The translations under genes were made by a program, and so were the position numbers. A DNA stretch of 63,174 nucleotides, the filler included, from Sphyrna mokarran (Eukaryota), in the NCBI GenBank assembly GCA_024679065.1. It is 2 parts of 2 records of this genome, joined end to end, with 100 filler letters (N's around TTAATTAATTAA, not from the genome) between each part and the next. Parts side by side here need not be neighbours in the genome. Positions count along the whole stretch, not along the records: positions 31,266 to 63,174 come from JAGIQG010000116.1; 1 more part is not named here. One strand, written 5' to 3'. Shown here in pieces: positions 31,266-43,003 of this stretch. The first letter of the stretch is position 1. Every line of letters starts with the position of its first letter. Below the pieces are notes generated by a model. The model saw only the letters and a program-made list of their open reading frames with translations, did no database searches and was not told the DNA's origin.

Positions 31266-32814
31266 TTTGGATAAAATGCTTGTCCTTTGAGAAGGGATTG
31301 AAGACCCATTGCCTTTTTCACTTACATTAAGATTAAAGGAATAAGGAGTGAACTCAATAGAATTTATTTTATTCTCAAAGGATATGACAAGACAAACTCT
31401 GGGTGTTTGTGTTTTTCTAGAGTAGAAAGTCTGTAACTTGGGGTCAGATTTGCAGAAAACCTGTTCAGCCATTTGGACTGAGAAGGGGAGAGATTTCTTC
31501 AGTCAAGGCCATTGTGGTGAATGTGAGAATTATGTGCACCCGAGAGTTGTGGATAGTCAGTGTTGAAGGCATTCAAGATAATGTTTGACAAAGGGTCATC
31601 TGGACTCGCGATATCAGCTCTTTTCTGTCCTTAGAGATACTATCAGACCTGCTGAGATTTTCCAGCATTTTCTCTTTTGATTTCAGATACCAGCATCTGC
31701 ACTAATTTGCTTTTCCTATCAGTTGGAACTATTGAATCAATGTATGCTTTCCTTAGGGAAGAAACCAGCAACAATTCACTCTCTCTTCAAGGGGGGAACA
31801 TGGTGGGTCTTTTTTCCCCCAGAGTTTGGAGAAACACGAGAGGATAAAGTTTTTTTTTAGTCACAAGTGAGGCTTACATTAACAGTGCAATGAAATTATT
31901 GTGAAATTCCCCTAGTCTGGCGCCTATTCGGATCAATGCGCTGAACTAGCAAATCTTTCAGAATGTGGAGGAATCTGGAACACCCGGAGGAAACCCGCAC
32001 AAACAGGAGGAGACCTTACAAACTCCAACAGATAGTGACCCAAGCCAGAAATCGAATCAAACACTTCATTGTGGCTCTCTATCACACATTCTCTCTCATA
32101 CACTTTCTCTCCTCTCCCTCTCTCTCTCTGACACACACAGACTCTCTCACAAACCTCCTCTCTAAACCTTCAGTGAAATCATATTTTTTTCAATACTGAG
32201 GCTAACAGCACTGTACACAGTACTCCAGATGTGGCCTATCGAAAGCTTTGTACAGCTTTAACATAATCCTGCTGTTTTAATATTCTTTGTTTTTGCACGA
32301 CTTATAAAGACAATCGTCCCGTCTGCCCCTAGTATCATCTCCTATCGCCTTCAGGGCCTTGTGGATGAGGAGTCAAATCTTTCTGTTCATTTGAGCTTTC
32401 CATGGCTCTGTCATTCATTAAATACTCCCTTGTCTTGTTACTCCTCCCACCGTGCATCCACTCGCACTTTTCAGTGTTAAGTTCCATGAGCCATTGACCT
32501 GCCATCTGACCAAGCTGTCAATATTATCCGACAATCTTTGACTTCTTCCTCACTATTAGCCATTCTGTTAATCTTCGTTCCATGTGAAAGCTTACATACC
32601 CACCATCCTCCACACACAGACATACACACAGTGCAGTGAGAGAGTGAGGAGGGAGTCTGTTTACCCTATGAGTACTATTCAAACTAACCCACATTCTGTG
32701 GATTGGATATAAATCTGCTCCAATTTATCCCAATTACAGACATTGTTTGGGGTTTAACTCTGTTGTGTGATTTGGCTCTGACGGCCCATTAAACTCTCTG
32801 TGTTTAATTTCCAG

Positions 32815-33162
32815 AATCTTTCAGTCAGTCAGTGACACAGAGCCCAAAAGCGGTGACCAGGAAGGAGTGTCAGTCTCTCACCATCACCTGTGTTTTCAAA
32901 GCTGATTATTCTAGTTTGGAGGGCGGACATTTCTTTAGGCAAACCCAGAGCGGGAAAGAACGGGAGCGGATCTCCAGCGGAGGAAGATTTGTTGTATCGG
33001 TGAATAAAGCACAAAACACATTTTCTCTTGAAATTCAGGATGTGAGAGTTGAAGACACCGCCATCTATTACTGTAAAGCTCAGTATAAACATGGATGTGG
33101 AACTAGCGTTTCAAAAGCGGGTTATGCAGACGGACCTGGAACGGTGGTGAATGTCACAGCTG
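32815..33162 (+). CDS. Germline-joined NAR-TCR V-(D)-J exon (IgNAR-type single V domain)
   Basis: tttccAG|...ACAGCTG|GTAAGT, 348 bp, phase 1-1, open: SFSQSVTQSPKAVTRKECQSLTITCVFKADYSSLEGGHFFRQTQSGKERERISSGGRFVVSVNKAQNTFSLEIQDVRVEDTAIYYCKAQYKHGCGTSVSKAGYADGPGTVVNVTA. Shows the VNAR-type short FR2-CDR2, an FR1 extra Cys and a continuous CDR3 plus GxGT J motif with no RSS. Confidence 0.9.
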
Positions 33163-36100
33163 GTAAGTGACTCCAAGCCGAAATATCTTACAGACTTACT
33201 GGGTTCATGTCCGCACTGTGGAGTTGGTGATGTGGTGGTAATGTAATTGCGTTAGTATTTCTGTGACCCAGTGCTCAGCCTGCACACGGTCAAATCTCAC
33301 CAGGGCAGCTGGTGCAATTTAATGGAAATTTATGTGAGCAACTGGAAGTAAAGACCAGTCTCAGTATGGCGATGATAAACCCGTTACGGATGGAAATCTG
33401 CCGTTTCCACCTGGTGTAGTAAATATGGTCATCAGTATAAAGCAATATGGTTTACTTTTACATGCTGTCTGTAATGAAGCTGAGCGAGGCACTGAGTAGA
33501 AACAAATTGTTGTGGCGTCTGAAAGAGGAATATTCAGATATTGTACTTGGCTGTGACATGGCACCGGAAATGACCATGGCAAACCCAATCCTCCCATTAA
33601 TGCCCTGATTGGCCATTTAAGTTGTCAATTACTTCCAAGGCCATTCCACTAATTAAAGATTGTTTCTTTTACTTCTTTCTAAGATGAAGAATGTTCCATG
33701 ATGTCTTCCTTGCCTGTTGGTACAGCATATTGAAATCTGCTATCACAGAATTATATAACATGGAATAGGCCCTTCAGCTTATCAAGTCTGTACCAACAAA
33801 ATCTTCATGAATTCCATCTTCCAGCACTAGACCCACAGCCTTAAATGTTTCGCAAGTTCATCTACGTCCATCTCCCTTTCTAAACATATGCCACCTATTT
33901 ATTGACCCTTCAACTGTGAGGAGAATTTGATTCCCATTTACCCTGTCAATTTCTGTATAAACTTATAGATCTCAAAGTGGGTCTCTGCTCTGAAGAGCAC
34001 AATATAAGCTTATCCAGGCTCATCTTGAAGTTCAAATTCTCCTTCGCAGGCGACATTATGGTGAATCTCCTCCGCACCCTTTCAGTGAAATCATATTCTT
34101 TCAATAGTGAGGCGATAGATGTGGCCTATCGAAATCTTTGTACAGCTCTAACATAACCCGGCAGTTTTAATAATTTATGCCATGACTTATTAAAGCGATT
34201 GTCCCGTCTGCCCCAATTATCATGTCCTATCGCCTTCAGTGATTTGTGGACAAGGAATCAAATCTTTCTGTTCATTTGAGCTTTCCAGTGTCCTGCCATT
34301 TATTAAATACTCCCTTGTCTTGTTACTCCTCCCAACATGTATCCCCATGCAATTTTCAGGATTAAGTTCCATCTGCCATTGATCTGCCGTTCACCCCATC
34401 CGTTCCCCTAGATATTGAATTCCTCTGTTTTCAACACCACTTGGAAGAGGAATTGATTGTGGTGATAAGTGAAATGTGGCCCAATCTGGAAACCCAATCT
34501 GGAGCACTCTGAAACAATTTTAACACAACCATCAGGAATGGCTTATCTCTTTGAAGTAAGTGAACCAATGATTGCCACACCAGGTTCTATACTGAAAGCG
34601 ATTGCCCTATGTGAAGGTATTAAGTATCCAAATGCTACCTTCTTAAGAGTTCAGAAGCATGACAGCCAATTCAACAGAAAATATTCTCCGGAGGTTTGAC
34701 GAAACAGATTCTGGGCATGTGTCCAGGCAGGGACGCCTTTAGCTTTGGGTCACAACTTTTAAATAATTGTCAATAATTGAGAAGAAGATAAATTCTTTCG
34801 GTTATTCCCTTTTATGAGTATCTGAGAAGCGTTTATATCAGAAAACTGTGAATGCTCAGTGGTTTTGTGTATTCAAGGCAATTACAGACAAGATTTTCCA
34901 AACTAAAAGGATCTTTTTTTACTGGATAAGTTCAGGAATGTGTTGGTGATTTAGCCCCAACTTTGTTGAAAACAGGGAAGATTTTAGCGTTCCCTCTGGA
35001 AAGTAAAGAGAGAAGAGAAGAATTCATAGAAACCGTTTAAATTCTGATTGTATAATGTGTGGGTGTTGACCAGTTCTTTATTTGTATGTGAGTTTAGAAC
35101 AATTTATACATGATTGGCACTAATAAAACTAATAAACAGATTGAGAGTAATAACTGTACGGTGGATTGTCAGAACTTGGCACATAGAACTGTTGGAGAAG
35201 GTAGTTTTGTTGCATTTGTGGGGCATCTTGAGCATACGGGGGGAGAAGGTAATAGATTTACAAAGGGAGCTGGATGTAAATATCAACTGGATTTCTGGAT
35301 GGAGGAGGTAAGTTTGGATAAATTTGCAACATAAATCAGTTGGGCCAAATGGTACAATATATTTTGGCAGACTCTTAATAACGTAAAACATAGAGAAAAC
35401 CCTGCCCCAAAAACCAGGGAAAGAACATTAATGTGCAGAAGGAATTAAAATTGTCAGAGAGCCGGAAGAGACGGTTCCCTGTGTGTAACTGTAAAACCAC
35501 TGTGGAAACTGAACAAACTGAACCCAACAGACAGCTGGGAGACTTTGAGACAAGTTCTCATGATTACAAGACACCGAACAATAGAACATGAAAATATAAA
35601 TAAAATGAAACTGATTAAACAGTCCTATTTTAATAGAAATAGAAAAATAGATAAACAAATGGATGAAAAGGCAAACATAAACTCCCAGAAGTTTTAAACC
35701 AAAATAAATTAATGACATTTGACCATCGATGTGCAGCTTCGTTCAGCCCCTTTGGAGCTGATGAATCACAATAACACTCTGTTGGGTCTTGCTGTGCTTG
35801 GTGTGGAGCTTATCTGGGTTATCCTGGGACAATCATGTCTGGAAACGGATTGCTTCACTGATGATAAAATGTTCCCTAGTGCTTGTCTGTCAATAATGAA
35901 AATAGAAGCTGGATTGTACTCTCCATCGCAGGATCATGTAGGGTGGAAGAATGGCATTCGGCCCTTCTTGTAGATGTTGACCCTTTATAAATGAAATCCA
36001 ATTCTTCCTAATGCCCACGAATTTTTCCCCATTACCCTGCTTGCCTTTCCTGTGCCGGTACTTGACCATTTGGTAATGACCAACTGGTCATTCACTGTTG

Positions 36101-36339
36101 AATCTGCTCCCACAACTCATTATGACAATACATTCCAGATCAGTAGTACTTGGTGTGTAAGAGATATTGCCTCAGGCTTCACTAGTTTGTATCGTAATAA
36201 GAGTGAATATAGTTCCATCAGATTTAATATGAAATTTTATAATATTTAATTAGAATACCGCAAATGAAGACATATTCCTGTGATTCCCATGTTGCACGGT
36301 AAAAAAGTGGATAAAACATCATTTTTTTTAATCCTTCAG

Positions 36340-36645
36340 ATTCCAGTTCCCTGGTGTCCAAGAATCCGCCTCTCCAAACCTCTGCTGCAGGGAACACGGT
36401 TATTCTAAGATGTGAATATTCAGGGTTATGTCAGTACACAGTACACTGGTACAGCCAATCTCCAGGGCAGGCTCCGAAATTATTGCAACAGGCACACACT
36501 TCAGGAGGGGACAACAAAGAAAACATTGCCAGAGACAGAATTTCTGCTTCTATCGATTCTGGCGAGAAAATCAGCCGATTAACAATCTCCAAACTGCAAC
36601 TGAGCGACTCGGCTGTGTACTACTGTGCACTGAGTCAACGCACAA
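36340..36645 (+). CDS. Leaderless supporting TCR delta-type V gene segment (unrearranged)
   Basis: ccttcAG|ATTCC.., phase 1: DSSSLVSKNPPLQTSAAGNTVILRCEYSGLCQYTVHWYSQSPGQAPKLL...RLTISKLQLSDSAVYYCALSQRT. Has the CDR1 extra Cys typical of NAR-TCR supporting V, followed by an RSS. Confidence 0.92.
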
Positions 36646-36684
36646 CACAGTGATAGAGAACACGGAGAGAGCAGTACAGAAACT
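36646..36684 (+). other. 23-bp-spacer recombination signal sequence of the supporting V
   Basis: CACAGTG-(23 nt)-ACAGAAACT. Confidence 0.95.
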
Positions 36685-36706
36685 TGAACATGGTGGGCAT
36701 TATAGA

Positions 36707-36745
36707 CTCCGTGATATAGAACCCGGAGAGAGGGGTACAGAAACC
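36707..36745 (+). other. Tandem-duplicated, probably inactive 23-RSS
   Basis: CTCCGTG-(23 nt)-ACAGAAACC; second copy of a 61-bp unit, with the heptamer CAC broken. Confidence 0.8.
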
Positions 36746-37007
36746 TGAACATGGTGGGGATTATATCGTGGTACCATAATAGCTGAAACCTCCTTAAAGC
36801 GGGTCAATAACCTCCCAGCCACTCAGCAGAACACCAAGCTCTCTCAATTGTAGCCAACATTACCCACACCCCCTCCCCCTCCACAGCACTCCCCACAACT
36901 TCCTTCCATTCCCACAGTGATATTCACTGAGAGTACACCATTACTAGTCTGACCGACCCCAAGTGGGACACGACAGAGGGACAGAGAGAGGTGGACCAGA
37001 CCACAAG

Positions 37008-37035
37008 AGATCTTGTTATGGAATGAAAGATTGTG
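37008..37035 (-). other. 12-bp-spacer RSS of the J segment
   Basis: + strand AGATCTTGT-(12 nt)-GATTGTG; nonamer matches GGTTTTTGT at 6 of 9 positions and the essential GTG is retained. Confidence 0.75.
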
Positions 37036-37098
37036 TGACATATGGCGAGACTAGAAAGCTCATCTTTGGCATTGGAACCAGGCTGATAGTGGAACCCA
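37036..37098 (+). CDS. TCR alpha/delta-type J gene segment (TYGETRKLIFGIGTRLIVEP)
   Basis: KLIFGxGTxLxVEP motif, phase-1 donor CCCA|GTAAGT, upstream 12-RSS; absent from the ORF track because it is short. Confidence 0.93.
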
Positions 37099-38690
37099 GT
37101 AAGTAACTAACTCTGGATGATTGCTCAATATGTTATTTTTCCCCTATGGCTTCATTGAGACATACAGTCGCTGTGATATTTCAATTATTACTGTTTTTGT
37201 ATGGAACGGGTGAGCAGTTTTCATTGGGAATCCAAAGAACAGCTTCACTGGGCATTGAGATAGAGCAGATGAGAGCTTTATTGTTTCCACATATCAGGAT
37301 TGTTTCCTTAAAACATTTAACTGGTCTTTATCATAAAAACCCACCTGAAATGGGTTGTGTGTAATGCTTTTAAATGATACATTGATAGATAGTTAAAGCA
37401 GGCCCACCCCATTAGAGTCATAAAGTTAGGCAACACTGTAAAAGTCACTTCACCTGAATGAGGGGCAGAGATAACATAGTCAGGAAAACACCTATCCCCA
37501 TTTTAGAGGGATCAATGAGGAACGTTTTTTCTGGAGGGAAGGGTGTGGTGTAGAGGAGACATTGATTTAAGGTACAGGGTAGGAGAGTTAGAGGGAAATC
37601 TGGAACTCACTATCTGATACAGTCATAGCCACAGAGACTCTCACAACACTTGGTTATGCATTTTTGATGCCATATCATACAGAGTAATGAGCCAAGTGCT
37701 GGAAATGGGATTAGAAAAGTCAGTTGGGTTGTCTTTAGACGGCTCAGATACGAAGGGCTAATGTAGACTTCTATTTTATTCCTTGTTGGAAGAGTCTAGG
37801 ACTAGAGGTTAAAACCAAGAGTGAGGGGTTGTCGATTTAAAGAGAGAGAAGATGAAGAATTTCTTCCTTTAAATGGTATTGAATCTGTGGACTTCTTTAT
37901 CGCAGATGGTTGTATAGGGCTGCTATTAAATACTTTGAATACAGGGATGGACAGGTTTTTAATCTGCAAGAAAACAAGGCTGATGGGGATATTGTGGGAA
38001 AATGGAGTTGAGGATTATCACATCAGATCAGTCGCGATTTCATTGAATAGTGGGTGAGCCGAATGGCCTCCTTCTACTCAGGGAGAAGGAAAAAGTGTAT
38101 CAAAGAATCGCTACAGTACAGAAGGAGGCCGTTCATCCCATCGAGACTGCACTGACCCTAATTCCACACAGGCTCTAACTTCATTATGCCACATATTTAC
38201 TCAACTAATCCTCTGACATTACGGTCAATTTAGCTTGGCCAGTCAACCTAACCCGCACATCCTTGGACTCTGAGAGGAAACCGGAGCACCCGGACGAAAC
38301 CCACCGGGAGATCACACAGAGAGTGAGCCGAGGCCGGAATTGAGCCTGGGTCTTTGGCGCTGTGAGGCAATAATGCTAACTATTGTGCTACAGTGCCGCC
38401 CTCCATCAGTCTCTTGTCCAAATATTGTTCTCTTTAAAATATTAAAAAAAAAACAGTGGGAACTAAGTGTGTGTGTGAGAGAGAGAGTGAGAGAGCGGCG
38501 TCACTCCTCAGACTTCTCTCCGCCAAGGGAATAAGATTGCTAATCCATTCTCAGCATTCAGTAATCAGTGTAGAAACTTATATCGGGTTAAAGCACAGGA
38601 AAAATGCGGGTCTAATCGAATGGGATTAGAGGGTGGAAGAGGTAATCTTTTATATTCTGGTTATTTCCTTTTATTTCTTAATTTTTTCAG

Positions 38691-39002
38691 AAGTGAAAAA
38701 CCTAAAAGAACCAAAATTGAGTGTCTTTTACCCGCCAGTGCCACCGGGAGCCACCAACACCAGCACCGCTGCAGTCTGCTTGGCCTCGGACTTCTCCCCC
38801 AAGGCAATCCAGCTCTCCCTGTACACAGGATCCGGCCAGGAGGTCAATGTGACAAGATCCAGTGTCCCATTGGAGAGCGGGAATTACAGGAGTTCGGGTT
38901 TCCTCTTTTTCTCCCAATCCGGGAAATCGCCAAACATCACGTGCAAGGCATTTCACAATAATCAGATTTACTCAGTAAACACCCTACCCACAGCTGGGAT
39001 TG
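38691..39002 (+). CDS. TCR delta-like constant Ig domain exon
   Basis: ttttttcAG|AAGTG...GGGATTG|GTAAGT, 312 bp, phase 1-1: KVKNLKEPKLSVFYPP...TAAVCLASDFSPKAI...NVTRS...GNYRSSGFL...NITCKAFHN; resembles shark TCR-delta C (PKLSxFYP, AAVCLASDFxPK). Confidence 0.9.
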
Positions 39003-39429
39003 GTAAGTTTATTTTATTTCCGTTCATGTGATGTGGGTGTCATTGGCTTGACCAGCATTTATTGCCCATCCTAAATTGCCCTTCAGCAGAGGGCATTTAA
39101 GATTCACTTACCGGCCAGGCAGTGTAAGGACGGCAGATTTCCTTCCCTAAAGGATATTAGTGAACCAAATGAGTTTTAATGATAAACGGCAATAATTCCA
39201 TTGGTCATCATTAGAATTCTAATTGTATTTCTTTAACATTCAAATTTCGCATCTGTCAGTGAATTTGAACACACATTAATATTCTGGATCGTTGGATTGA
39301 CAATATCACTGCGCTCCTGCCTCCCCTGAGAGTGTTTTATGACAAGAAGAACGTCCCTAAATATTATCCATCCCCTGAACACTTTCGGCGTCATTGTCCC
39401 TCAGAATGTTGTCTTTTTGAAAGATTAGC

Positions 39430-40400
39430 TGACTAATGATTGAAGGTCAATTATTCTAGTCTCGGGACTTCACTGCAGGAGTTCCTCAGTGTCTCAGAAC
39501 CAATCAGCTTCAGCTGCTTCATCAATCACCTTCAATCCATTGTTAAGGTCAGATGTTGGGATGTTCGCTGATAACTGAACAATGTTCAGCACCATTCATG
39601 ATCCCTCAGATCATGAAGTAATGCATTACAAATGTAGCAATAGTTGGACATTATCCAGGCTTGGACTGACAAGCTGCAAATAACATTGCACCACCCACGT
39701 TCCAGACAATGACCAACTCCAACAGGAAAGAAGGTAACAATCGGTTCTTGTCATTTACTGGCGTTACCATGACTGAAACAAAGAACAAAGAAAATTACAG
39801 CGCAGGAACAGGCCCTTCGGCCCTTCAAGCCTGCACTGAACATGCTGCCCCGACTGAACTGAAATCTCCCACATTTCCGGCGCCATTTCACTCTATTCCC
39901 ATCCTATTCATGTATTTGTCCAGATGCCTCTTAAAACTCACTATCGTATCTGCTTCCACTACCATTCCTGGCAGCGAGTTCCACCATCCACCATCCTGTG
40001 TGTAAAAAATAAATGCCTCGCACATCTCCTTCAAACCTTAACTCTATGCTCCTTAATAATTGACTCTTCCATACTGAGAGAAAAAGAAGTTTCTGACTAT
40101 TCAATCTGTACATGCCTCCTTGTAGATTTCTAAATGGTCCACCCACACTATCAACAGCCTGAGGGTTAACGTTGCTCAGAAGCTGAACTGGATTAACCAT
40201 ACAAGTGCTCCGACTGCAAGAGCATGGCGGAGATTGGGAATCCTGTGCTGAATAACGTGTCTCTTAAACTCCCAAATCCTCTGCACCATCCACAAGACAT
40301 AATCATGACTGTGGTAGTGTATTAACCACTTGCTTGATGAATGCAGCTCCAGCAACACTCAGAAATTTGACTAAACAGCACAAAACAGCTCCGCTTGATT
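39430..40400 (+). mobile_element. Old CR1-clade LINE remnant with a nested minus-strand CR1 tail (about 39775-40130)
   Basis: gcaggagttcctcag...ttcagctgcttcatcaat...atgttcgctgata (GVPQ..FSCFIN..MFAD). Confidence 0.65.
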
Positions 40401-41874
40401 AAATGTTTTTTTTTAAATGTCACAAGTAGACTTAGATTAAACCAGCAATGAAGTTACTGTGAAAGTCTCCTAATCACCACACTCTGCACTTGTTCGGGGA
40501 CACTGAGGAAGAATGTAGCATGACCCAATGCATCTAATCAGCACGTCTTTCAGAGGAAACCGGACTTGGAGAATGACTGCTGTGTATCCTGTGGATCAGA
40601 CCCACGCTGACAAGAGGAAAACGTGCAGACTCTGCACCTCTGCACCGACAAACACCCAAGCCGGGAATCAAATCCAGGTCCCTGTCGCAGTGGGCACGGT
40701 GGGGGGGTGGGGGGGGTGGGGGTGGGGGGTGCGTGGGGGGAGGAAAGGGATGGAGGTGGGGGGGAGGGCAAGGGGGGTGCAACAGTACTAACCACTGTGC
40801 ACCTGTGCCGCTTTAGCATCAAGTACTTCATTCACAAACATCCACTTCTTCCACCACCAAAACACAGTGGTAGCAGAGTTTGCCATCCACAAGATACACA
40901 GCAGTGATTCTCCAAGTCTCTTTCTGCTGAACCTTCCAAACTCATGGCCGTTATCAAAGAACAAAGAACAACACAGCACAGGAAACAAGCACTTCAGCCC
41001 AACAAGCTCACGCCGTCATTTTAACATTCAGTGAACACCTCATTCCAATCCTTCTTCTACCTATGACTTTGGCCTACGCCTCTAGGATTCCATGATAAAG
41101 GTGTGCACATTTACAAAATTATATATCATCTCGGAGGACAAGGGCAGCAAATGCCTGGGAACACCATTATCACTTAACATCCTGACTTGGAAATACTTTG
41201 GCATTTCCTTCACTGTCGCTCTATGAAAATGTTGGAACTTCTTCCCTAAGAGCCCTGTGTGTATGCATACCTCACGGACTGGAGAGTTTCAATCAGGGGA
41301 CTCACAACCATCTTCTGAAGGGGGTAATTAGGGATTGACAGTAAATGCTGACCTGCCAGCGATATCCACATTCCATAAGTGAATAAAAATAATAAGAGCG
41401 AACCATTATAGTTCACGGCAGTGTCCAGGATCCGCAGCTGCTGGTGTATCACCGAATTTAGGAAAGTATTAAATACTAACCAGGGTACTGGAGAATCCCG
41501 CTCCTCTGGAGAAATGTCCTGATATCATTAATCCACTGCAGAGCTGAAATCAGACCTCGGTTTCACCACTTCTTCGGAAGACAGTGAAATACCGCCCCAA
41601 TGGAATGGTCTGGATTCTGGGGTTTAATCCCTGATAGGTAATCGAACCTACACTCTTTGAACTCAGATTTGGGCCGAACTAAATGGCAGATTTACCAATG
41701 TTTCTCCATTGTGAATAATGAACTGAACATATCCAATCGTGCTGTTTGATTCTTACTTTCTTCGTGGCTATTTGTTATGACAACAATATTATTGGAAGTG
41801 ATATTGACAACAAACATGGTCACAGTAATGGCACTTATTCACTGAATAAGTCAGTTTGTTTTGTGTCCTTCCAG

Positions 41875-41922
41875 ATCAAACTAAATGCCTTAAAAGTCGA
41901 TATGATTCCTCGACAGAAAACG
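41875..41922 (+). CDS. TCR connecting-peptide (hinge) exon with interchain Cys (DQTKCLKSRYDSSTEN)
   Basis: gtccttccAG|ATCAA...AAAACG|GTATGT, 48 bp, phase 1-1. Confidence 0.85.
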
Positions 41923-42393
41923 GTATGTGCTTTATTCAACATTTCTCAATGGAAAATACTGCAAATAGAAAGATTGATAACTGAGAGATAGGCAGGGGTA
42001 CAGACCCGGATATCGAATGATAAAGATATAATGAGATGGAGAGAAAGATAGATCGTCACACAGAGTGAGGGAGAGAGAGATATAAATCGAGGGATGCGGG
42101 GGATGGGGTGGAGGTGGGGGGCAAGAAAGAGAGAGAGAGGAGGAGACGGAGAGAGAGAGAGAGGGAGAGAGAGAGAGAGAGAGGGAGATTCAGGGTGAAA
42201 GACAGATGCAGATAGATCGACAGCAGACAGTCGGGCTGGTGGACAGAGGACAGCGGACAGGATGGACAGACGGACAAAAGTCAAGCAGTTAGATAATGGA
42301 AAAGAAACACATTAATGTTATACATTTCTTTTTCAGTTCCAAGTGATATATGTACCAAACCAGATCTATCATTTGTTCTTCTCATTGTGGCAG

Positions 42394-42503
42394 ATCGACT
42401 GAGGACAAACTTTTTGTCTTTGATGGTGATGGGGCTAAGAATTTTGTTTCTCAAGAGCATTGTCTTCAGTGTCCTGATGACGGCCAGGGTGTGGTTATTT
42501 TGA
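42394..42503 (+). CDS. TCR alpha/delta-type transmembrane exon (DRLRTNFLSLMVMGLRILFLKSIVFSVLMTARVWLF*)
   Basis: gtggcAG|ATCGA; NxLSL..GLRIL.LK...F...MT.R.W motif with the two basic TM residues (R, K); stop immediately followed by donor G|GTAAGA, as in TRAC/TRDC with an untranslated last exon. Confidence 0.93.
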
Positions 42504-43003
42504 GGTAAGATCGGTCACCTAAATGCCTGCCCAGAAAGACAAAAGTGTGATGGACACAGTCCATTGACGGGATCCCGCGAGGTCACTGTTAAGGCAGCGC
42601 TGAAGCTAACCCGTGGAGTGAACAGTAACTTGGATACATTTAGACAAACGGACTCTTCCCCCAGTGCCCCATCCTCATCGCTTTTCATCCCGTCAACCCC
42701 CGCCCCCAATCGCAACCTTAACTTCTTAAACCTCTCCAGAGTTGTGTTTAATTATGGGTGTCACTGACAGACCAGCCTTTTTACACCCATCCTCTGGTCT
42801 TGACCTGTGTGGCACTTTCAGAGAGTCAGTGCAGACTCTATGGGCCAAATTGCATCCTTCTGCACTGTAGGGATTTTTGTGCACTTGCATTGGCTTCTGA
42901 GAATATTAATGGAGCAGGTTAATGGAGACTTTAAAGATAAAATGTGTTCTTTTCTTGCTGATCTTTGATGTTCTCCCATTGTTGTTCCTTTCATTCCAAA
43001 CAG

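What the first reader, a model, noticed from the sequence alone, without database searches (positions are those of the whole stretch)
32815..42504. Self-contained mini NAR-TCR locus: pre-joined NAR V, one V, one J and its own C-delta-like gene in under 10 kb
Seen: five open exons plus a J segment, all phase 1, give NAR-V / supporting V / J / C / hinge Cys / TM with R and K, with a compatible 23/12 RSS pair and no gaps inside the unit. Established: shark NAR-TCR is described as a doubly rearranging TCR-delta chain whose NARV-D-J cassettes and supporting V use the shared D, J and C of the TCR alpha/delta translocon. Inference: this is instead an Ig-cluster-style TCR unit with private J and C, flanked by a GPCR and tRNAs rather than V-alpha/J-alpha arrays. 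It mirrors marsupial TCR-mu, where the distal V rearranges and the proximal V is pre-joined. It would encode a near-invariant, innate-like three-domain TCR chain. I do not know of this arrangement being described.
Basis: partly seen in the sequence, partly recalled or inferred. Interest (0 to 1): 0.93.

Follow-up and report, generated by a model that had tools for sequence, protein, structure and literature searches.

The report
Shark double-V T-cell receptor mini-locus
A shark genome piece holds a compact T-cell receptor delta-type gene whose outer antibody-like (NAR) domain is already assembled in the germline and which has its own joining and constant segments, but its start-signal exon is broken, so it is probably part of a larger unit rather than a self-contained gene.

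Summary
On the + strand of 32815-42504 there are five open phase-1 exons plus a J. They are a germline-joined NAR V(D)J exon, a leaderless supporting V-delta with a canonical 23-RSS, one J with a weak but conserved 12-RSS, and a TCR-delta-type C (Ig, hinge-Cys and TM R/K exons). There are no gaps.

The private J and C are real. The nearest relatives are Mustelus asterias RefSeq models: eight of 14 carry C plus TM, on eight contigs, and five of those read leader-NAR V-supporting V-C. Notes from this scan (unchecked) report more such clusters on other DNA of this genome. The joined CDR3, with its extra Cys, aligns without gaps with Carcharodon and Cetorhinus models.

The unit is not self-contained. 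No usable leader exists in the piece, and a leader-like remnant 217 bp upstream lacks ATG. The exon must therefore be fed by an upstream exon outside my piece, or be skipped. A "near-invariant three-domain chain" is unproven. A three-V chain or a relic exon are live alternatives.

No RNA evidence could be obtained. No held paper describes this layout, but the primary NAR-TCR papers and the supplements could not be read. I rate it a new variant of a known kind.

The parts
32556..32597 (+). Probable remnant of the NAR V leader exon (LAILLIFVPCESLH), with TTA in place of the start codon and no usable phase-1 donor at the expected place
   Evidence: It is the best local match to 18 shark NAR-TCR leaders, about 217 bp upstream of the V exon. 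The score is 37 against a shuffle mean of 30.1 (sd 3.1), and 3 of 60 shuffles reach it, so the match is suggestive only. The lead came from note s1-887126.
32815..33162 (+). Germline-joined NAR-type V(D)J exon, phase 1 at both ends, with FR4 and a splice donor and a Cys in CDR3
   Evidence: full-length matches to VNAR structures, E about 1e-20. Searches show 75-76% gapless identity to Carcharodon and Cetorhinus models, including the CDR3.
36340..36645 (+). Leaderless supporting V-delta gene segment (splice acceptor, CDR1 Cys, ends YYCALSQRT)
   Evidence: One search gives 82% identity to Mustelus P0040 and 80% to P0035.
36646..36684 (+). 23-RSS of the supporting V: CACAGTG, 23-base spacer, ACAGAAACT
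   Evidence: The spacer and flank are conserved in read-through translations of Mustelus P0081, Rhincodon P0095 and Pristiophorus P0069.
36706..36765 (+). Second copy of the 61-bp RSS-containing unit. The heptamer has decayed to CTCCGTG (no CAC); the nonamer is ACAGAAACC
   Evidence: 1.9 copies, 87-89% identity.
37008..37035 (+). 12-RSS of J: AGATCTTGT, 12-base spacer, GATTGTG (nonamer 6/9, heptamer 5/7, CAC end kept)
   Evidence: Read; it fell below the threshold of the scan. Its translation SCYGMKDC matches SCYGIKLC in Mustelus P0081 and SCYGIKPC in Scyliorhinus P0007.
37036..37098 (+). Single J segment (TYGETRKLIFGIGTRLIVEP) with a GTAAGT donor, phase 1
   Evidence: One search found one other FGxG-type match in the piece (59195, - strand), which I did not take for a J segment.
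38691..39002 (+). TCR-delta-type constant Ig-domain exon
   Evidence: C1-set. Searches give 76-83% identity to Mustelus C regions. Searches show that the named relatives are T cell receptor delta constant of Hypanus and Leucoraja and the mouse TCR delta chain 1ypz_E.
41875..41922 (+). Hinge / connecting-peptide exon with the interchain Cys (DQTKCLKSRYDSSTEN)
   Evidence: It is collinear with the Mustelus D(K/E)PKCPT...TEN stretch.
42337..42504 (+). Transmembrane exon (…DRLRTNFLSLMVMGLRILFLKSIVFSVLMTARVWLF, stop). An alternative in-frame acceptor lies at 42394. The stop TGA (42501-03) sits 2 nt before a GT donor, so an untranslated last exon is expected further downstream
   Evidence: The Mustelus models join TEN directly to DRLRVNFLSL.

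Best explanation
This is a real, intact-looking member of a multi-copy family of cluster-type NAR-TCR (TCR-delta) genes in a shark whose nearest available relative is Mustelus asterias.

Shown by the sequence:
- a germline-joined NAR V(D)J exon;
- 3.2 kb further on, a leaderless supporting V-delta with a 23-RSS;
- 390 bp further on, one J with a 12-RSS and no D in between;
- then the unit's own C-delta gene (Ig, hinge and TM exons), all in phase 1.

Inferred mechanism: one RAG-mediated V-to-J deletion builds the supporting V exon. An ACA microhomology at the two coding ends would give an in-frame join. Splicing then links [upstream exon] - NAR V - V-delta/J - C. The chain pairs with TCR-gamma through the hinge Cys and assembles with CD3 through the TM Arg and Lys.

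The NAR exon's own leader looks disabled in place. The signal peptide must therefore come from an exon upstream of the piece. An unchecked note of this scan places a rearranging L-NAR V-D-J cassette there. The 9.7-kb stretch is thus the 3' body of a larger unit, not a self-contained gene.

The joined NAR domain belongs to a conserved subfamily with a fixed, Cys-bearing CDR3.
For: - Anatomy and phases.
- NAR-type V including FR4.
- Delta-type C.
- Family hallmarks invariant or nearly so in 44 aligned sequences (a-b loop Cys C18, Phe in place of Trp, CDR1 Cys of the supporting V). The hallmarks are as described in the passages of PMC1845163.
- Multi-copy C in a relative: eight of 14 Mustelus models among the 77 hits carry C plus TM, on eight contigs. 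Five of them read L-NAR V-supporting V-C. There are also two C fragments, one of them on a further contig. At least three C sequence types exist.
- Conserved joined CDR3: gapless alignment with Carcharodon P0054, P0055 and P0044 and Cetorhinus P0057.
- No leader in the piece.
- Leader remnant without ATG.
- Splice-compatible tandem NAR exons in RefSeq models: Carcharodon P0044 and Heterodontus P0043.
- No other V in the 32-kb piece, and no other convincing J (one further FGxG-type match at 59195 on the - strand, not taken for a J); a GPCR and two tRNAs lie downstream.
- Unchecked notes of the same scan report further such clusters on other pieces.
Against: - No RNA evidence. No run was listed, so no splice junction or V-J joint has been seen.
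- The region upstream of 31266 is outside my piece, so the source of a leader is unverified.
- The leader-remnant match is weak (3 of 60 shuffles reach it).
- The J RSS is only 5/7 and 6/9.
- RefSeq models are predictions. At least some bridge unrearranged V and J with pseudo-introns (for example P0035, ALK|TRKLIFG), so "joined" NAR V in other species is certain only where the CDR3 matches the contiguous window sequence.
- The Mustelus contigs could include haplotigs.
- The C tree does not resolve whether the duplications predate the species split.
- The species is not identified.
Confidence: 0.62

Rival explanations
1. This is a fully self-contained mini-locus whose own leader feeds the pre-joined NAR V. 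It gives a near-invariant three-domain chain (NAR V - V-delta - C-delta), innate-like, with only V-J junctional diversity.
For: - Lamniform relatives of this NAR subfamily do have a leader directly in front (P0054, P0055, P0057). Five Mustelus models read L-NAR V-supporting V-C.
- The V-J coding ends share an in-frame ACA microhomology (read).
Against: - No ATG-initiated, hydrophobic phase-1 exon resembling the 18 known leaders occurs anywhere in the piece.
- The only leader-like stretch has TTA at the start position and extra CA-rich sequence before any donor.
- A LINE fragment sits directly upstream of it.
Confidence: 0.1
2. Relic exon. The pre-joined NAR V lost its leader and is a decaying duplicate that is skipped or unused. 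The working product, if there is one, is a conventional chain made from upstream segments spliced or rearranged to the supporting V, J and C. Alternatively the whole cluster is a non-functional copy.
For: - Leader lesions and a LINE insertion lie just upstream.
- Many copies exist, so redundancy is likely.
- No expression evidence.
Against: - The exon is open over 115 codons with intact acceptor and donor.
- It keeps every invariant or near-invariant family residue.
- It shares the Cys-bearing CDR3 with the lamniform models.
- The supporting V, both RSSs, the J and three C exons are all intact.
Confidence: 0.2
3. This is simply the 3' end of the canonical TCR alpha/delta translocon. On this view it is the last NAR V / supporting V pair, followed by the species' ordinary J-delta and C-delta, which are shared by all upstream V segments.
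For: - Held papers describe NAR-TCR as part of the TCR-delta locus, in translocon arrangement (passages).
- Upstream V segments, if present, could also reach this J.
Against: - No D segment and no convincing J-alpha-like segment occur in the 20.7 kb after C (one FGxG-type match at 59195 on the - strand, not taken for a J). A GPR139-like GPCR and two tRNA genes lie there instead.
- Mustelus has C plus TM in eight of 14 models on eight contigs, and two C-bearing models on one 20.4-Mb contig.
- Unchecked notes list several C-bearing clusters in this genome.
Confidence: 0.06
4. Assembly artefact, or a somatically rearranged allele captured in the assembly.
For: The stretch lies in a duplicated, repeat-rich region. 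I found nothing else in its favour.
Against: - There are no gaps.
- The order and phases of the exons match natural RefSeq models from another species.
- The joined CDR3 is shared with two other species, which a somatic joint would not be.
Confidence: 0.02

Closest known systems
Shark NAR-TCR (doubly rearranging TCR-delta; Criscitiello et al. 2006, known to me only through passages in PMC1845163, PMC12227049, PMC6795676, PMC5931798 and PMC3457774)
   Same: - An N-terminal NAR-type V with an a-b loop Cys and no Trp in the WYRK position.
- A dedicated leaderless supporting V-delta with a CDR1 Cys.
- A TCR-delta-type C with a hinge Cys and TM Arg/Lys.
- All junctions are phase 1.
   Different: - The NAR V is already joined in the germline instead of being assembled from V, D and J.
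- The supporting V has no D and a single J 390 bp away.
- The unit carries its own C instead of the shared C of a translocon.
- The NAR leader appears disabled.
Marsupial and monotreme TCR-mu (passages of PMC3457774, PMC2275272, PMC7615758)
   Same: - Tandem cluster organisation with private C genes.
- Two V domains per chain.
- One V germline-joined (marsupials).
- A supporting V without D segments (platypus).
   Different: - The polarity is opposite. In TCR-mu the membrane-proximal supporting V is pre-joined and the outer V rearranges.
- The TCR-mu V genes are VH-related, not NAR-related.
- The papers themselves treat the two receptors as convergent, not homologous.
Cartilaginous-fish Ig miniclusters, including germline-joined clusters (passages of PMC3149040, PMC1845163; listing of PMC2192082)
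   Same: A (V-(D)-J-C)n layout with V and J a few hundred bases apart, and germline joining of segments.
   Different: The C here is a TCR-delta-type membrane C with CD3-assembly residues, and there are two V exons in series.
Germline-joined TRD V-J gene of the newt Pleurodeles waltl, and the separate TCR-delta2 clusters of birds (passage of PMC12698447; abstract of PMC5278385)
   Same: - A TRD V region fixed in the germline. In the newt it is used in about a third of clonotypes.
- A TRD-type C outside the main alpha/delta arrangement.
   Different: These are single-V chains with no NAR domain, in unrelated lineages.

Membership tests
NAR-TCR (TCR-delta chain with an extra NAR V domain) | N-terminal V of NAR type: a Cys in the a-b loop and no Trp in the WYRK motif | tested here: met
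   The exon reads TRKECQSLTITC and HFFRQ. C18 is invariant and F39 nearly invariant in 44 aligned sequences. There are full-length matches to VNAR structures. The feature definition comes from the passages of PMC1845163.
NAR-TCR (TCR-delta chain with an extra NAR V domain) | A dedicated supporting V-delta without a leader, entered by a splice acceptor, with a Cys in CDR1 | tested here: met
   The acceptor is at 36338-39 and the exon starts at 36340. CDR1 reads CEYSGLCQYTVHWY. Identity to Mustelus supporting V is 80-82%.
NAR-TCR (TCR-delta chain with an extra NAR V domain) | The NAR V is assembled somatically from its own V, D and J ("doubly rearranging") | tested here: not met
   The exon is contiguous from FR1 to FR4 plus donor, with no RSS inside. 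Unrearranged relatives end at YYC.AQY followed by the RSS (P0003, P0005).
NAR-TCR (TCR-delta chain with an extra NAR V domain) | The NAR V has a typical leader peptide | tested here: not met
   No leader was found in the piece. The remnant at 32556-32597 has no ATG.
NAR-TCR (TCR-delta chain with an extra NAR V domain) | Uses a TCR-delta constant region | tested here: met
   Named relatives of the C exon are T cell receptor delta constant of Hypanus sabinus and Leucoraja erinacea. The only alpha/delta-class PDB chain among the 60 rows shown is mouse TCR delta, 1ypz_E.
NAR-TCR (TCR-delta chain with an extra NAR V domain) | Expressed as a spliced NAR V - V-delta - C transcript in T cells | not testable with these tools
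   No sequencing run was listed, so read laying could not be used.
Canonical TCR alpha/delta translocon | D-delta and J-delta segments and one shared C-delta, followed by the J-alpha array and C-alpha | tested here: not met
   There is no D between V and J. No convincing J-like segment occurs in the 20.7 kb after C (one FGxG-type match at 59195 on the - strand, not taken for a J). A GPCR and tRNAs lie there instead. Only 20.7 kb is visible, so a more distant array cannot be excluded.
Cluster (minilocus) organisation, as in shark Ig and in TCR-mu | V, J and C of one unit lie within a few kb, and the unit is repeated in the genome | tested here: inconclusive
   Within one unit the feature is met: V to the end of C spans 6.2 kb. 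Repetition in this genome rests on unchecked notes. Repetition in Mustelus asterias rests on RefSeq models on eight contigs.
TCR-mu | VH-related V genes and a C-mu of mammalian descent | tested here: not met
   The V domains here are NAR-type and V-delta-type, and the C groups with shark C-delta. The resemblance is an analogy only.

The most novel reading that the evidence does not exclude
The pre-joined, leader-less NAR exon is a middle domain. An upstream rearranging L-NAR V-D-J cassette would splice through its phase-1 J donor onto 32815. That gives a four-domain delta chain with three V domains in series: a diverse NAR V, an invariant NAR V, V-delta, then C-delta.

On this reading the conserved extra Cys in the joined CDR3 plays, for the domain above it, the role that the CDR1 Cys of the supporting V-delta is thought to play for the NAR V, namely an interdomain disulfide to the a-b loop Cys.

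Whole units of this kind, each with its own C, would have multiplied in this shark lineage, a TCR locus organised like shark Ig clusters.
Probability: 0.3. Interest if true: 0.9.

Novelty: new variant of a known kind. Interest (0 to 1): 0.66.

Why it matters
In the papers I could read, TCR genes of cartilaginous fish are presented as translocons and NAR-TCR as a doubly rearranging delta chain that uses the shared C-delta. Three things would follow if this finding holds.

- A NAR-TCR unit with a private J and C, repeated in the genome, would show that Ig-style cluster duplication also reshaped a TCR locus in sharks. That would be convergent with mammalian TCR-mu.
- A germline-fixed NAR domain whose CDR3 is shared among three shark genera points to an innate-like, possibly ligand-specific, single-domain binder on gamma/delta-type T cells.
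- If the exon is an internal domain, it would be the first antigen-receptor chain with three V domains.

All of this can be tested directly with thymus or spleen long-read RNA and a genome census.

Tried and rejected
- **Leader search.** I scanned 31266-32814 for an ATG followed by 10-30 codons and a phase-1 GT. This gave three candidates. None is leader-like, and one lies in a repeated LINE fragment. A six-frame identity scan with 18 known leaders found no + strand match of at least 8/14. A gapped local alignment found only the ATG-less remnant.
- **D segments and further V or J.** None was found, apart from one FGxG-type match at 59195 on the - strand, which I did not take for a J segment.
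- **Tandem duplication of the NAR unit.** The 1.89-kb direct repeats that flank the NAR exon are only LINE fragments, so I rejected this idea.
- **Tree of C domains.** The aim was to date the duplications. The result was unresolved (6 of 11 inner branches open). Hypanus P0016, Leucoraja P0027 and P0103 were dropped because my motif did not find their start.
- **PDB search with the supporting V.** The list was swamped by multi-domain scFv entries and was uninformative.
- **Regex census of joined NAR V.** It counted 35 of 77 models. This undercounts: P0075, P0080, P0090 and P0094 are also continuous. It also cannot tell true joining from pseudo-introns.
- **Literature.** Eight searches found no held paper that describes germline-joined NAR-TCR V genes, NAR-TCR clusters with a private C, or three-V chains.
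  - Criscitiello 2006 and 2010, Deiss 2019 and Ott 2021 are not held.
  - Supplements are closed, including Supplementary Note XI of PMC3964593 and table S1 of PMC12227049. Any of these may already cover this.
- **Joined model.** I did not build or search a joined spliced model. Each exon was searched on its own. Whole-chain comparison used the natural Mustelus protein P0006.

Full report
**What is there**

- **NAR V exon, 32815-33162.** It follows a pyrimidine tract and an AG. It is open throughout and ends in GCT G|GTAAGT, so it is phase 1 at both ends. It encodes a complete V domain including FR4: ...YYCKAQYKHGCGTSVSKAGYADGPGTVVNVTA.
- **Supporting V, 36340-36645.** It also begins at an acceptor in phase 1 and has no leader. 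It ends YYCALSQRT and is followed by CACAGTG, a 23-base spacer and ACAGAAACT (7/7 and 7/9).
- **J, 37036-37098.** It lies 390 bp further on and reads TYGETRKLIFGIGTRLIVEP with a GTAAGT donor. Its RSS has a 12-base spacer and is weak (nonamer 6/9, heptamer 5/7, CAC end kept). It fell below my scan threshold, so I read it.
- **C gene.** This comprises an Ig exon (38691-39002), a hinge exon with a Cys (41875-41922) and a TM exon (42337-42504) with Arg and Lys five residues apart. The stop lies 2 nt before a GT donor.

Pfam calls the three Ig exons V-set, V-set and C1-set. No D-like RSS pair lies between V and J. The piece holds no other V, and one other FGxG-type match (59195, - strand) that I did not take for a J segment.

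I made two small corrections. The Mustelus models join the hinge to DRLRVNFLSL, which corresponds to an internal in-frame acceptor at 42394. The RSS sits in a 61-bp unit present 1.9 times, and the second heptamer has decayed.

**What kind of gene it is**

- The first exon matches solved VNAR domains over its whole length, FR4 included (for example 7fbk_C, residues 3-113, E=1.8e-20).
- It has the two hallmarks given for NAR-TCR V in the passages of PMC1845163: a Cys in the a-b loop (KEC) and no Trp in the WYRK position (HFFRQ).
- The second V has the hallmarks of the NAR-associated V-delta: no leader and a CDR1 Cys.
- In an alignment of 44 sequences, the a-b loop Cys is invariant. The Phe and the CDR1 Cys are nearly invariant.
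- The C exon's named relatives are "T cell receptor delta constant" of Hypanus sabinus and Leucoraja erinacea.
- Among the 60 PDB rows shown, the only alpha/delta-class chain is mouse TCR delta.

This is a NAR-TCR-type delta gene.

**Relatives**

The C exon's best full-length relative is Mustelus asterias XP_078058183.1 (P0006, 385 aa). It reads leader, NAR V, supporting V, C, hinge and TM in the same order as the window.

A search with P0006 gave 77 proteins, of which 14 are from Mustelus asterias.
- Eight of those 14 carry C plus TM.
- Five of them read L-NAR V-supporting V-C.
- Two further C fragments exist, P0001 and P0002. One lies on a ninth contig and one on the same 20.4-Mb contig as P0037.
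- At least three C sequence types are present. The window's C is 76-83% identical to them, against 54% to a Scyliorhinus canicula model and 45% to a Cetorhinus model.

By contrast, all 6 Carcharodon models lie on one 20.4-Mb scaffold, all 6 Heterodontus models on one 59.5-Mb scaffold, and all 5 Pristis models on one 57.8-Mb scaffold. None of them includes C+TM by my motif test. That fits arrays of V pairs in a translocon, but it could also reflect truncated models.

So C-bearing NAR-TCR units are multiple in at least one related shark. Unchecked first-stage notes of this scan report several more such clusters on other pieces of this same genome. I could not examine those pieces. The species was not identified.

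**The pre-joined NAR V**

Unrearranged relatives end at YYC.AQY followed by an RSS-like read-through (P0003, P0005). The window exon continues without any RSS through 14 further residues into a J-like FR4 with a splice donor, so it is joined in the germline.

Its CDR3 aligns without gaps to four RefSeq models from two other species:
- Carcharodon P0054 (KAQYRYRCGSTVSKDAYEDGSGT);
- Cetorhinus P0057, which has the same CDR3;
- Carcharodon P0055;
- both NAR domains of Carcharodon P0044.

Overall identity is 74-76%.

A somatic joint or an assembly accident would not be shared between species. This is a conserved germline-joined subfamily with a fixed extra Cys in CDR3.

For the many other models that look continuous through FR4 (at least 35 of 77 by my regex, which undercounts) I am less sure. 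Gene predictors do bridge unrearranged segments with pseudo-introns, as P0035 shows for V-delta to J.

**Signals are conserved**

Read-through translations that cover the 23-RSS and its flank are shared between the window (NTERAVQKLEHGG), Mustelus P0081, Rhincodon P0095 and, in another frame, Pristiophorus P0069. The stretch in front of J (SCYGMKDC) is shared with Mustelus P0081 and Scyliorhinus P0007. This argues that the weak-looking J RSS is under constraint.

The V coding end (...CGC ACA A) and the J coding start (TG ACA TAT...) share an ACA that would give an in-frame join. I read this. It agrees with note s1-886836.

**The missing leader**

Every full relative starts MG(I/L)LL.F..C.CLP(R)SFSQSV. 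The window exon starts xSFSQSV, so it expects an upstream phase-1 exon.
- None is present in the 1.55 kb to the piece edge. Three ATG candidates were examined and none is leader-like.
- No + strand match of at least 8/14 to 18 known leaders occurs anywhere in the piece.
- Following note s1-887126, I found LAILLIFVPCESLH at 32556-32597, about 217 bp upstream. This is a normal leader-intron distance. The stretch is collinear with the leader but has TTA at the Met position and extra CA-rich sequence before any donor.
- The match is only suggestive: score 37 against 30.1 ± 3.1, reached by 3 of 60 shuffles.
- A LINE fragment abuts it.

The unit is therefore not self-contained. Either an exon beyond the piece edge supplies the signal peptide, or the NAR exon is not used. 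Note s1-887012, which I could not check, says that a rearranging NAR V-D-J cassette lies just upstream.

Joined NAR exons are symmetric (phase 1-1), so they can be concatenated by splicing. RefSeq models Carcharodon P0044 and Heterodontus P0043 do exactly that (…TVTAG|SFSQSV…, then the supporting V). Those are predictions, and P0044 lacks a leader.

**Surroundings**

Downstream of C there is no convincing J-alpha-like segment for 20.7 kb (one FGxG-type match at 59195 on the - strand, not taken for a J). The following lie there instead:
- an intact 319-aa rhodopsin-family GPCR on the - strand, whose best solved relative is GPR139 (E=1e-6);
- tRNA-Gln and tRNA-Arg.

This argues against the canonical C-delta/J-alpha junction, but not strongly against proximity to the alpha/delta region. 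An unchecked note (s1-887455) places GPR139-like arrays beside TCR V clusters elsewhere in this genome.

**How it most likely works**

The anatomy above is shown by the sequence. The following steps are inferred.
1. One 12/23 V-to-J deletion of 390 bp builds the supporting V exon.
2. Transcription starts from a promoter upstream of the piece.
3. Phase-1 splicing links the upstream exon(s), the invariant NAR V, V-delta/J and C.
4. The chain pairs with TCR-gamma through the hinge Cys and assembles with CD3 through the TM Arg and Lys.

Diversity would be limited to the V-J junction, plus whatever an upstream rearranging NAR cassette adds.

They are weighed in their own sections.

**What could not be done**
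- No sequencing run was listed, so there is no evidence for or against expression, and read laying was not used.
There is therefore no orthologous DNA, no dN/dS and no structure.
- The C tree is unresolved.

**Comparison with what is in print**

From the passages I read, NAR-TCR is described as a doubly rearranging delta chain of the TCR-delta locus, and shark TCR loci as translocons. These passages are in:
- PMC1845163;
- PMC12227049 (passages and section 6);
- PMC6795676;
- PMC3964593;
- PMC3457774;
- PMC5931798;
- PMC2275272;
- PMC7615758;
- PMC3149040.

PMC3149040 does speak of "V-NAR gene clusters ... in the TCR-delta loci". Germline-joined TRD V-J genes are reported in a newt (PMC12698447), and germline-joined V in marsupial TCR-mu.

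Eight searches found no held text that describes germline-joined NAR-TCR V genes, private-C NAR-TCR clusters or three-V chains. The primary papers (Criscitiello 2006 and 2010, Deiss 2019, Ott 2021) are not held, and supplements are closed. Prior description cannot be excluded.

**Verdict**

This is a new variant of a known kind (NAR-TCR). Its notable features are a conserved germline-fixed NAR domain, a D-less V-J pair with a private C, and an open question about what sits in front of it.

Noticed in passing
window 36645-36765: A 61-bp unit that contains the 23-RSS of the supporting V is tandemly duplicated (1.9 copies, 87-89% identity). The second heptamer is CTCCGTG and has lost the CAC. The second nonamer (ACAGAAACC) is closer to consensus than the first. 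Unchecked notes (s1-887384, s1-886788) report similar RSS arrays behind other supporting V genes of this genome.
   Followed up: partly
window 54706-55665 (- strand): An intact intronless 319-aa rhodopsin-family GPCR (7tm_1, E=1.5e-19). Its best solved relative is GPR139 (E=1e-6). An unchecked note says GPR139-like arrays abut TCR alpha/delta V clusters elsewhere in this genome.
   Followed up: partly
window 60501-60573 (+) and 61538-61612 (-): tRNA-Gln(TTG) and tRNA-Arg(ACG) genes lie about 18-19 kb downstream of the C gene.
   Followed up: no
window 32227-32503 and 34117-34388: Two same-orientation copies (84-87% identity) of a LINE fragment bracket the NAR exon. Reverse-transcriptase-like ORFs lie on the - strand. 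The first copy ends about 50 bp before the leader remnant.
   Followed up: partly
proteins P0044 (Carcharodon carcharias) and P0043 (Heterodontus francisci): These RefSeq models splice one germline-joined NAR V exon onto a second one (…TVTAG|SFSQSV…) and then onto a supporting V. Tandem, splice-compatible NAR exons therefore exist in two other shark orders.
   Followed up: partly
protein P0004 (ENA contig, 116 aa): This NAR-type V ORF continues past YYCEAQY into WYYTHGTPQ, which matches the CDR3 of Mustelus P0065, and then diverges. It is possibly a partially (V-D) joined germline gene.
   Followed up: no
window 42037-42206 and 40680-40790: GA-rich and G-rich low-complexity tracts lie in the C-gene introns, between the hinge and TM exons and between the Ig and hinge exons.
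   Followed up: no
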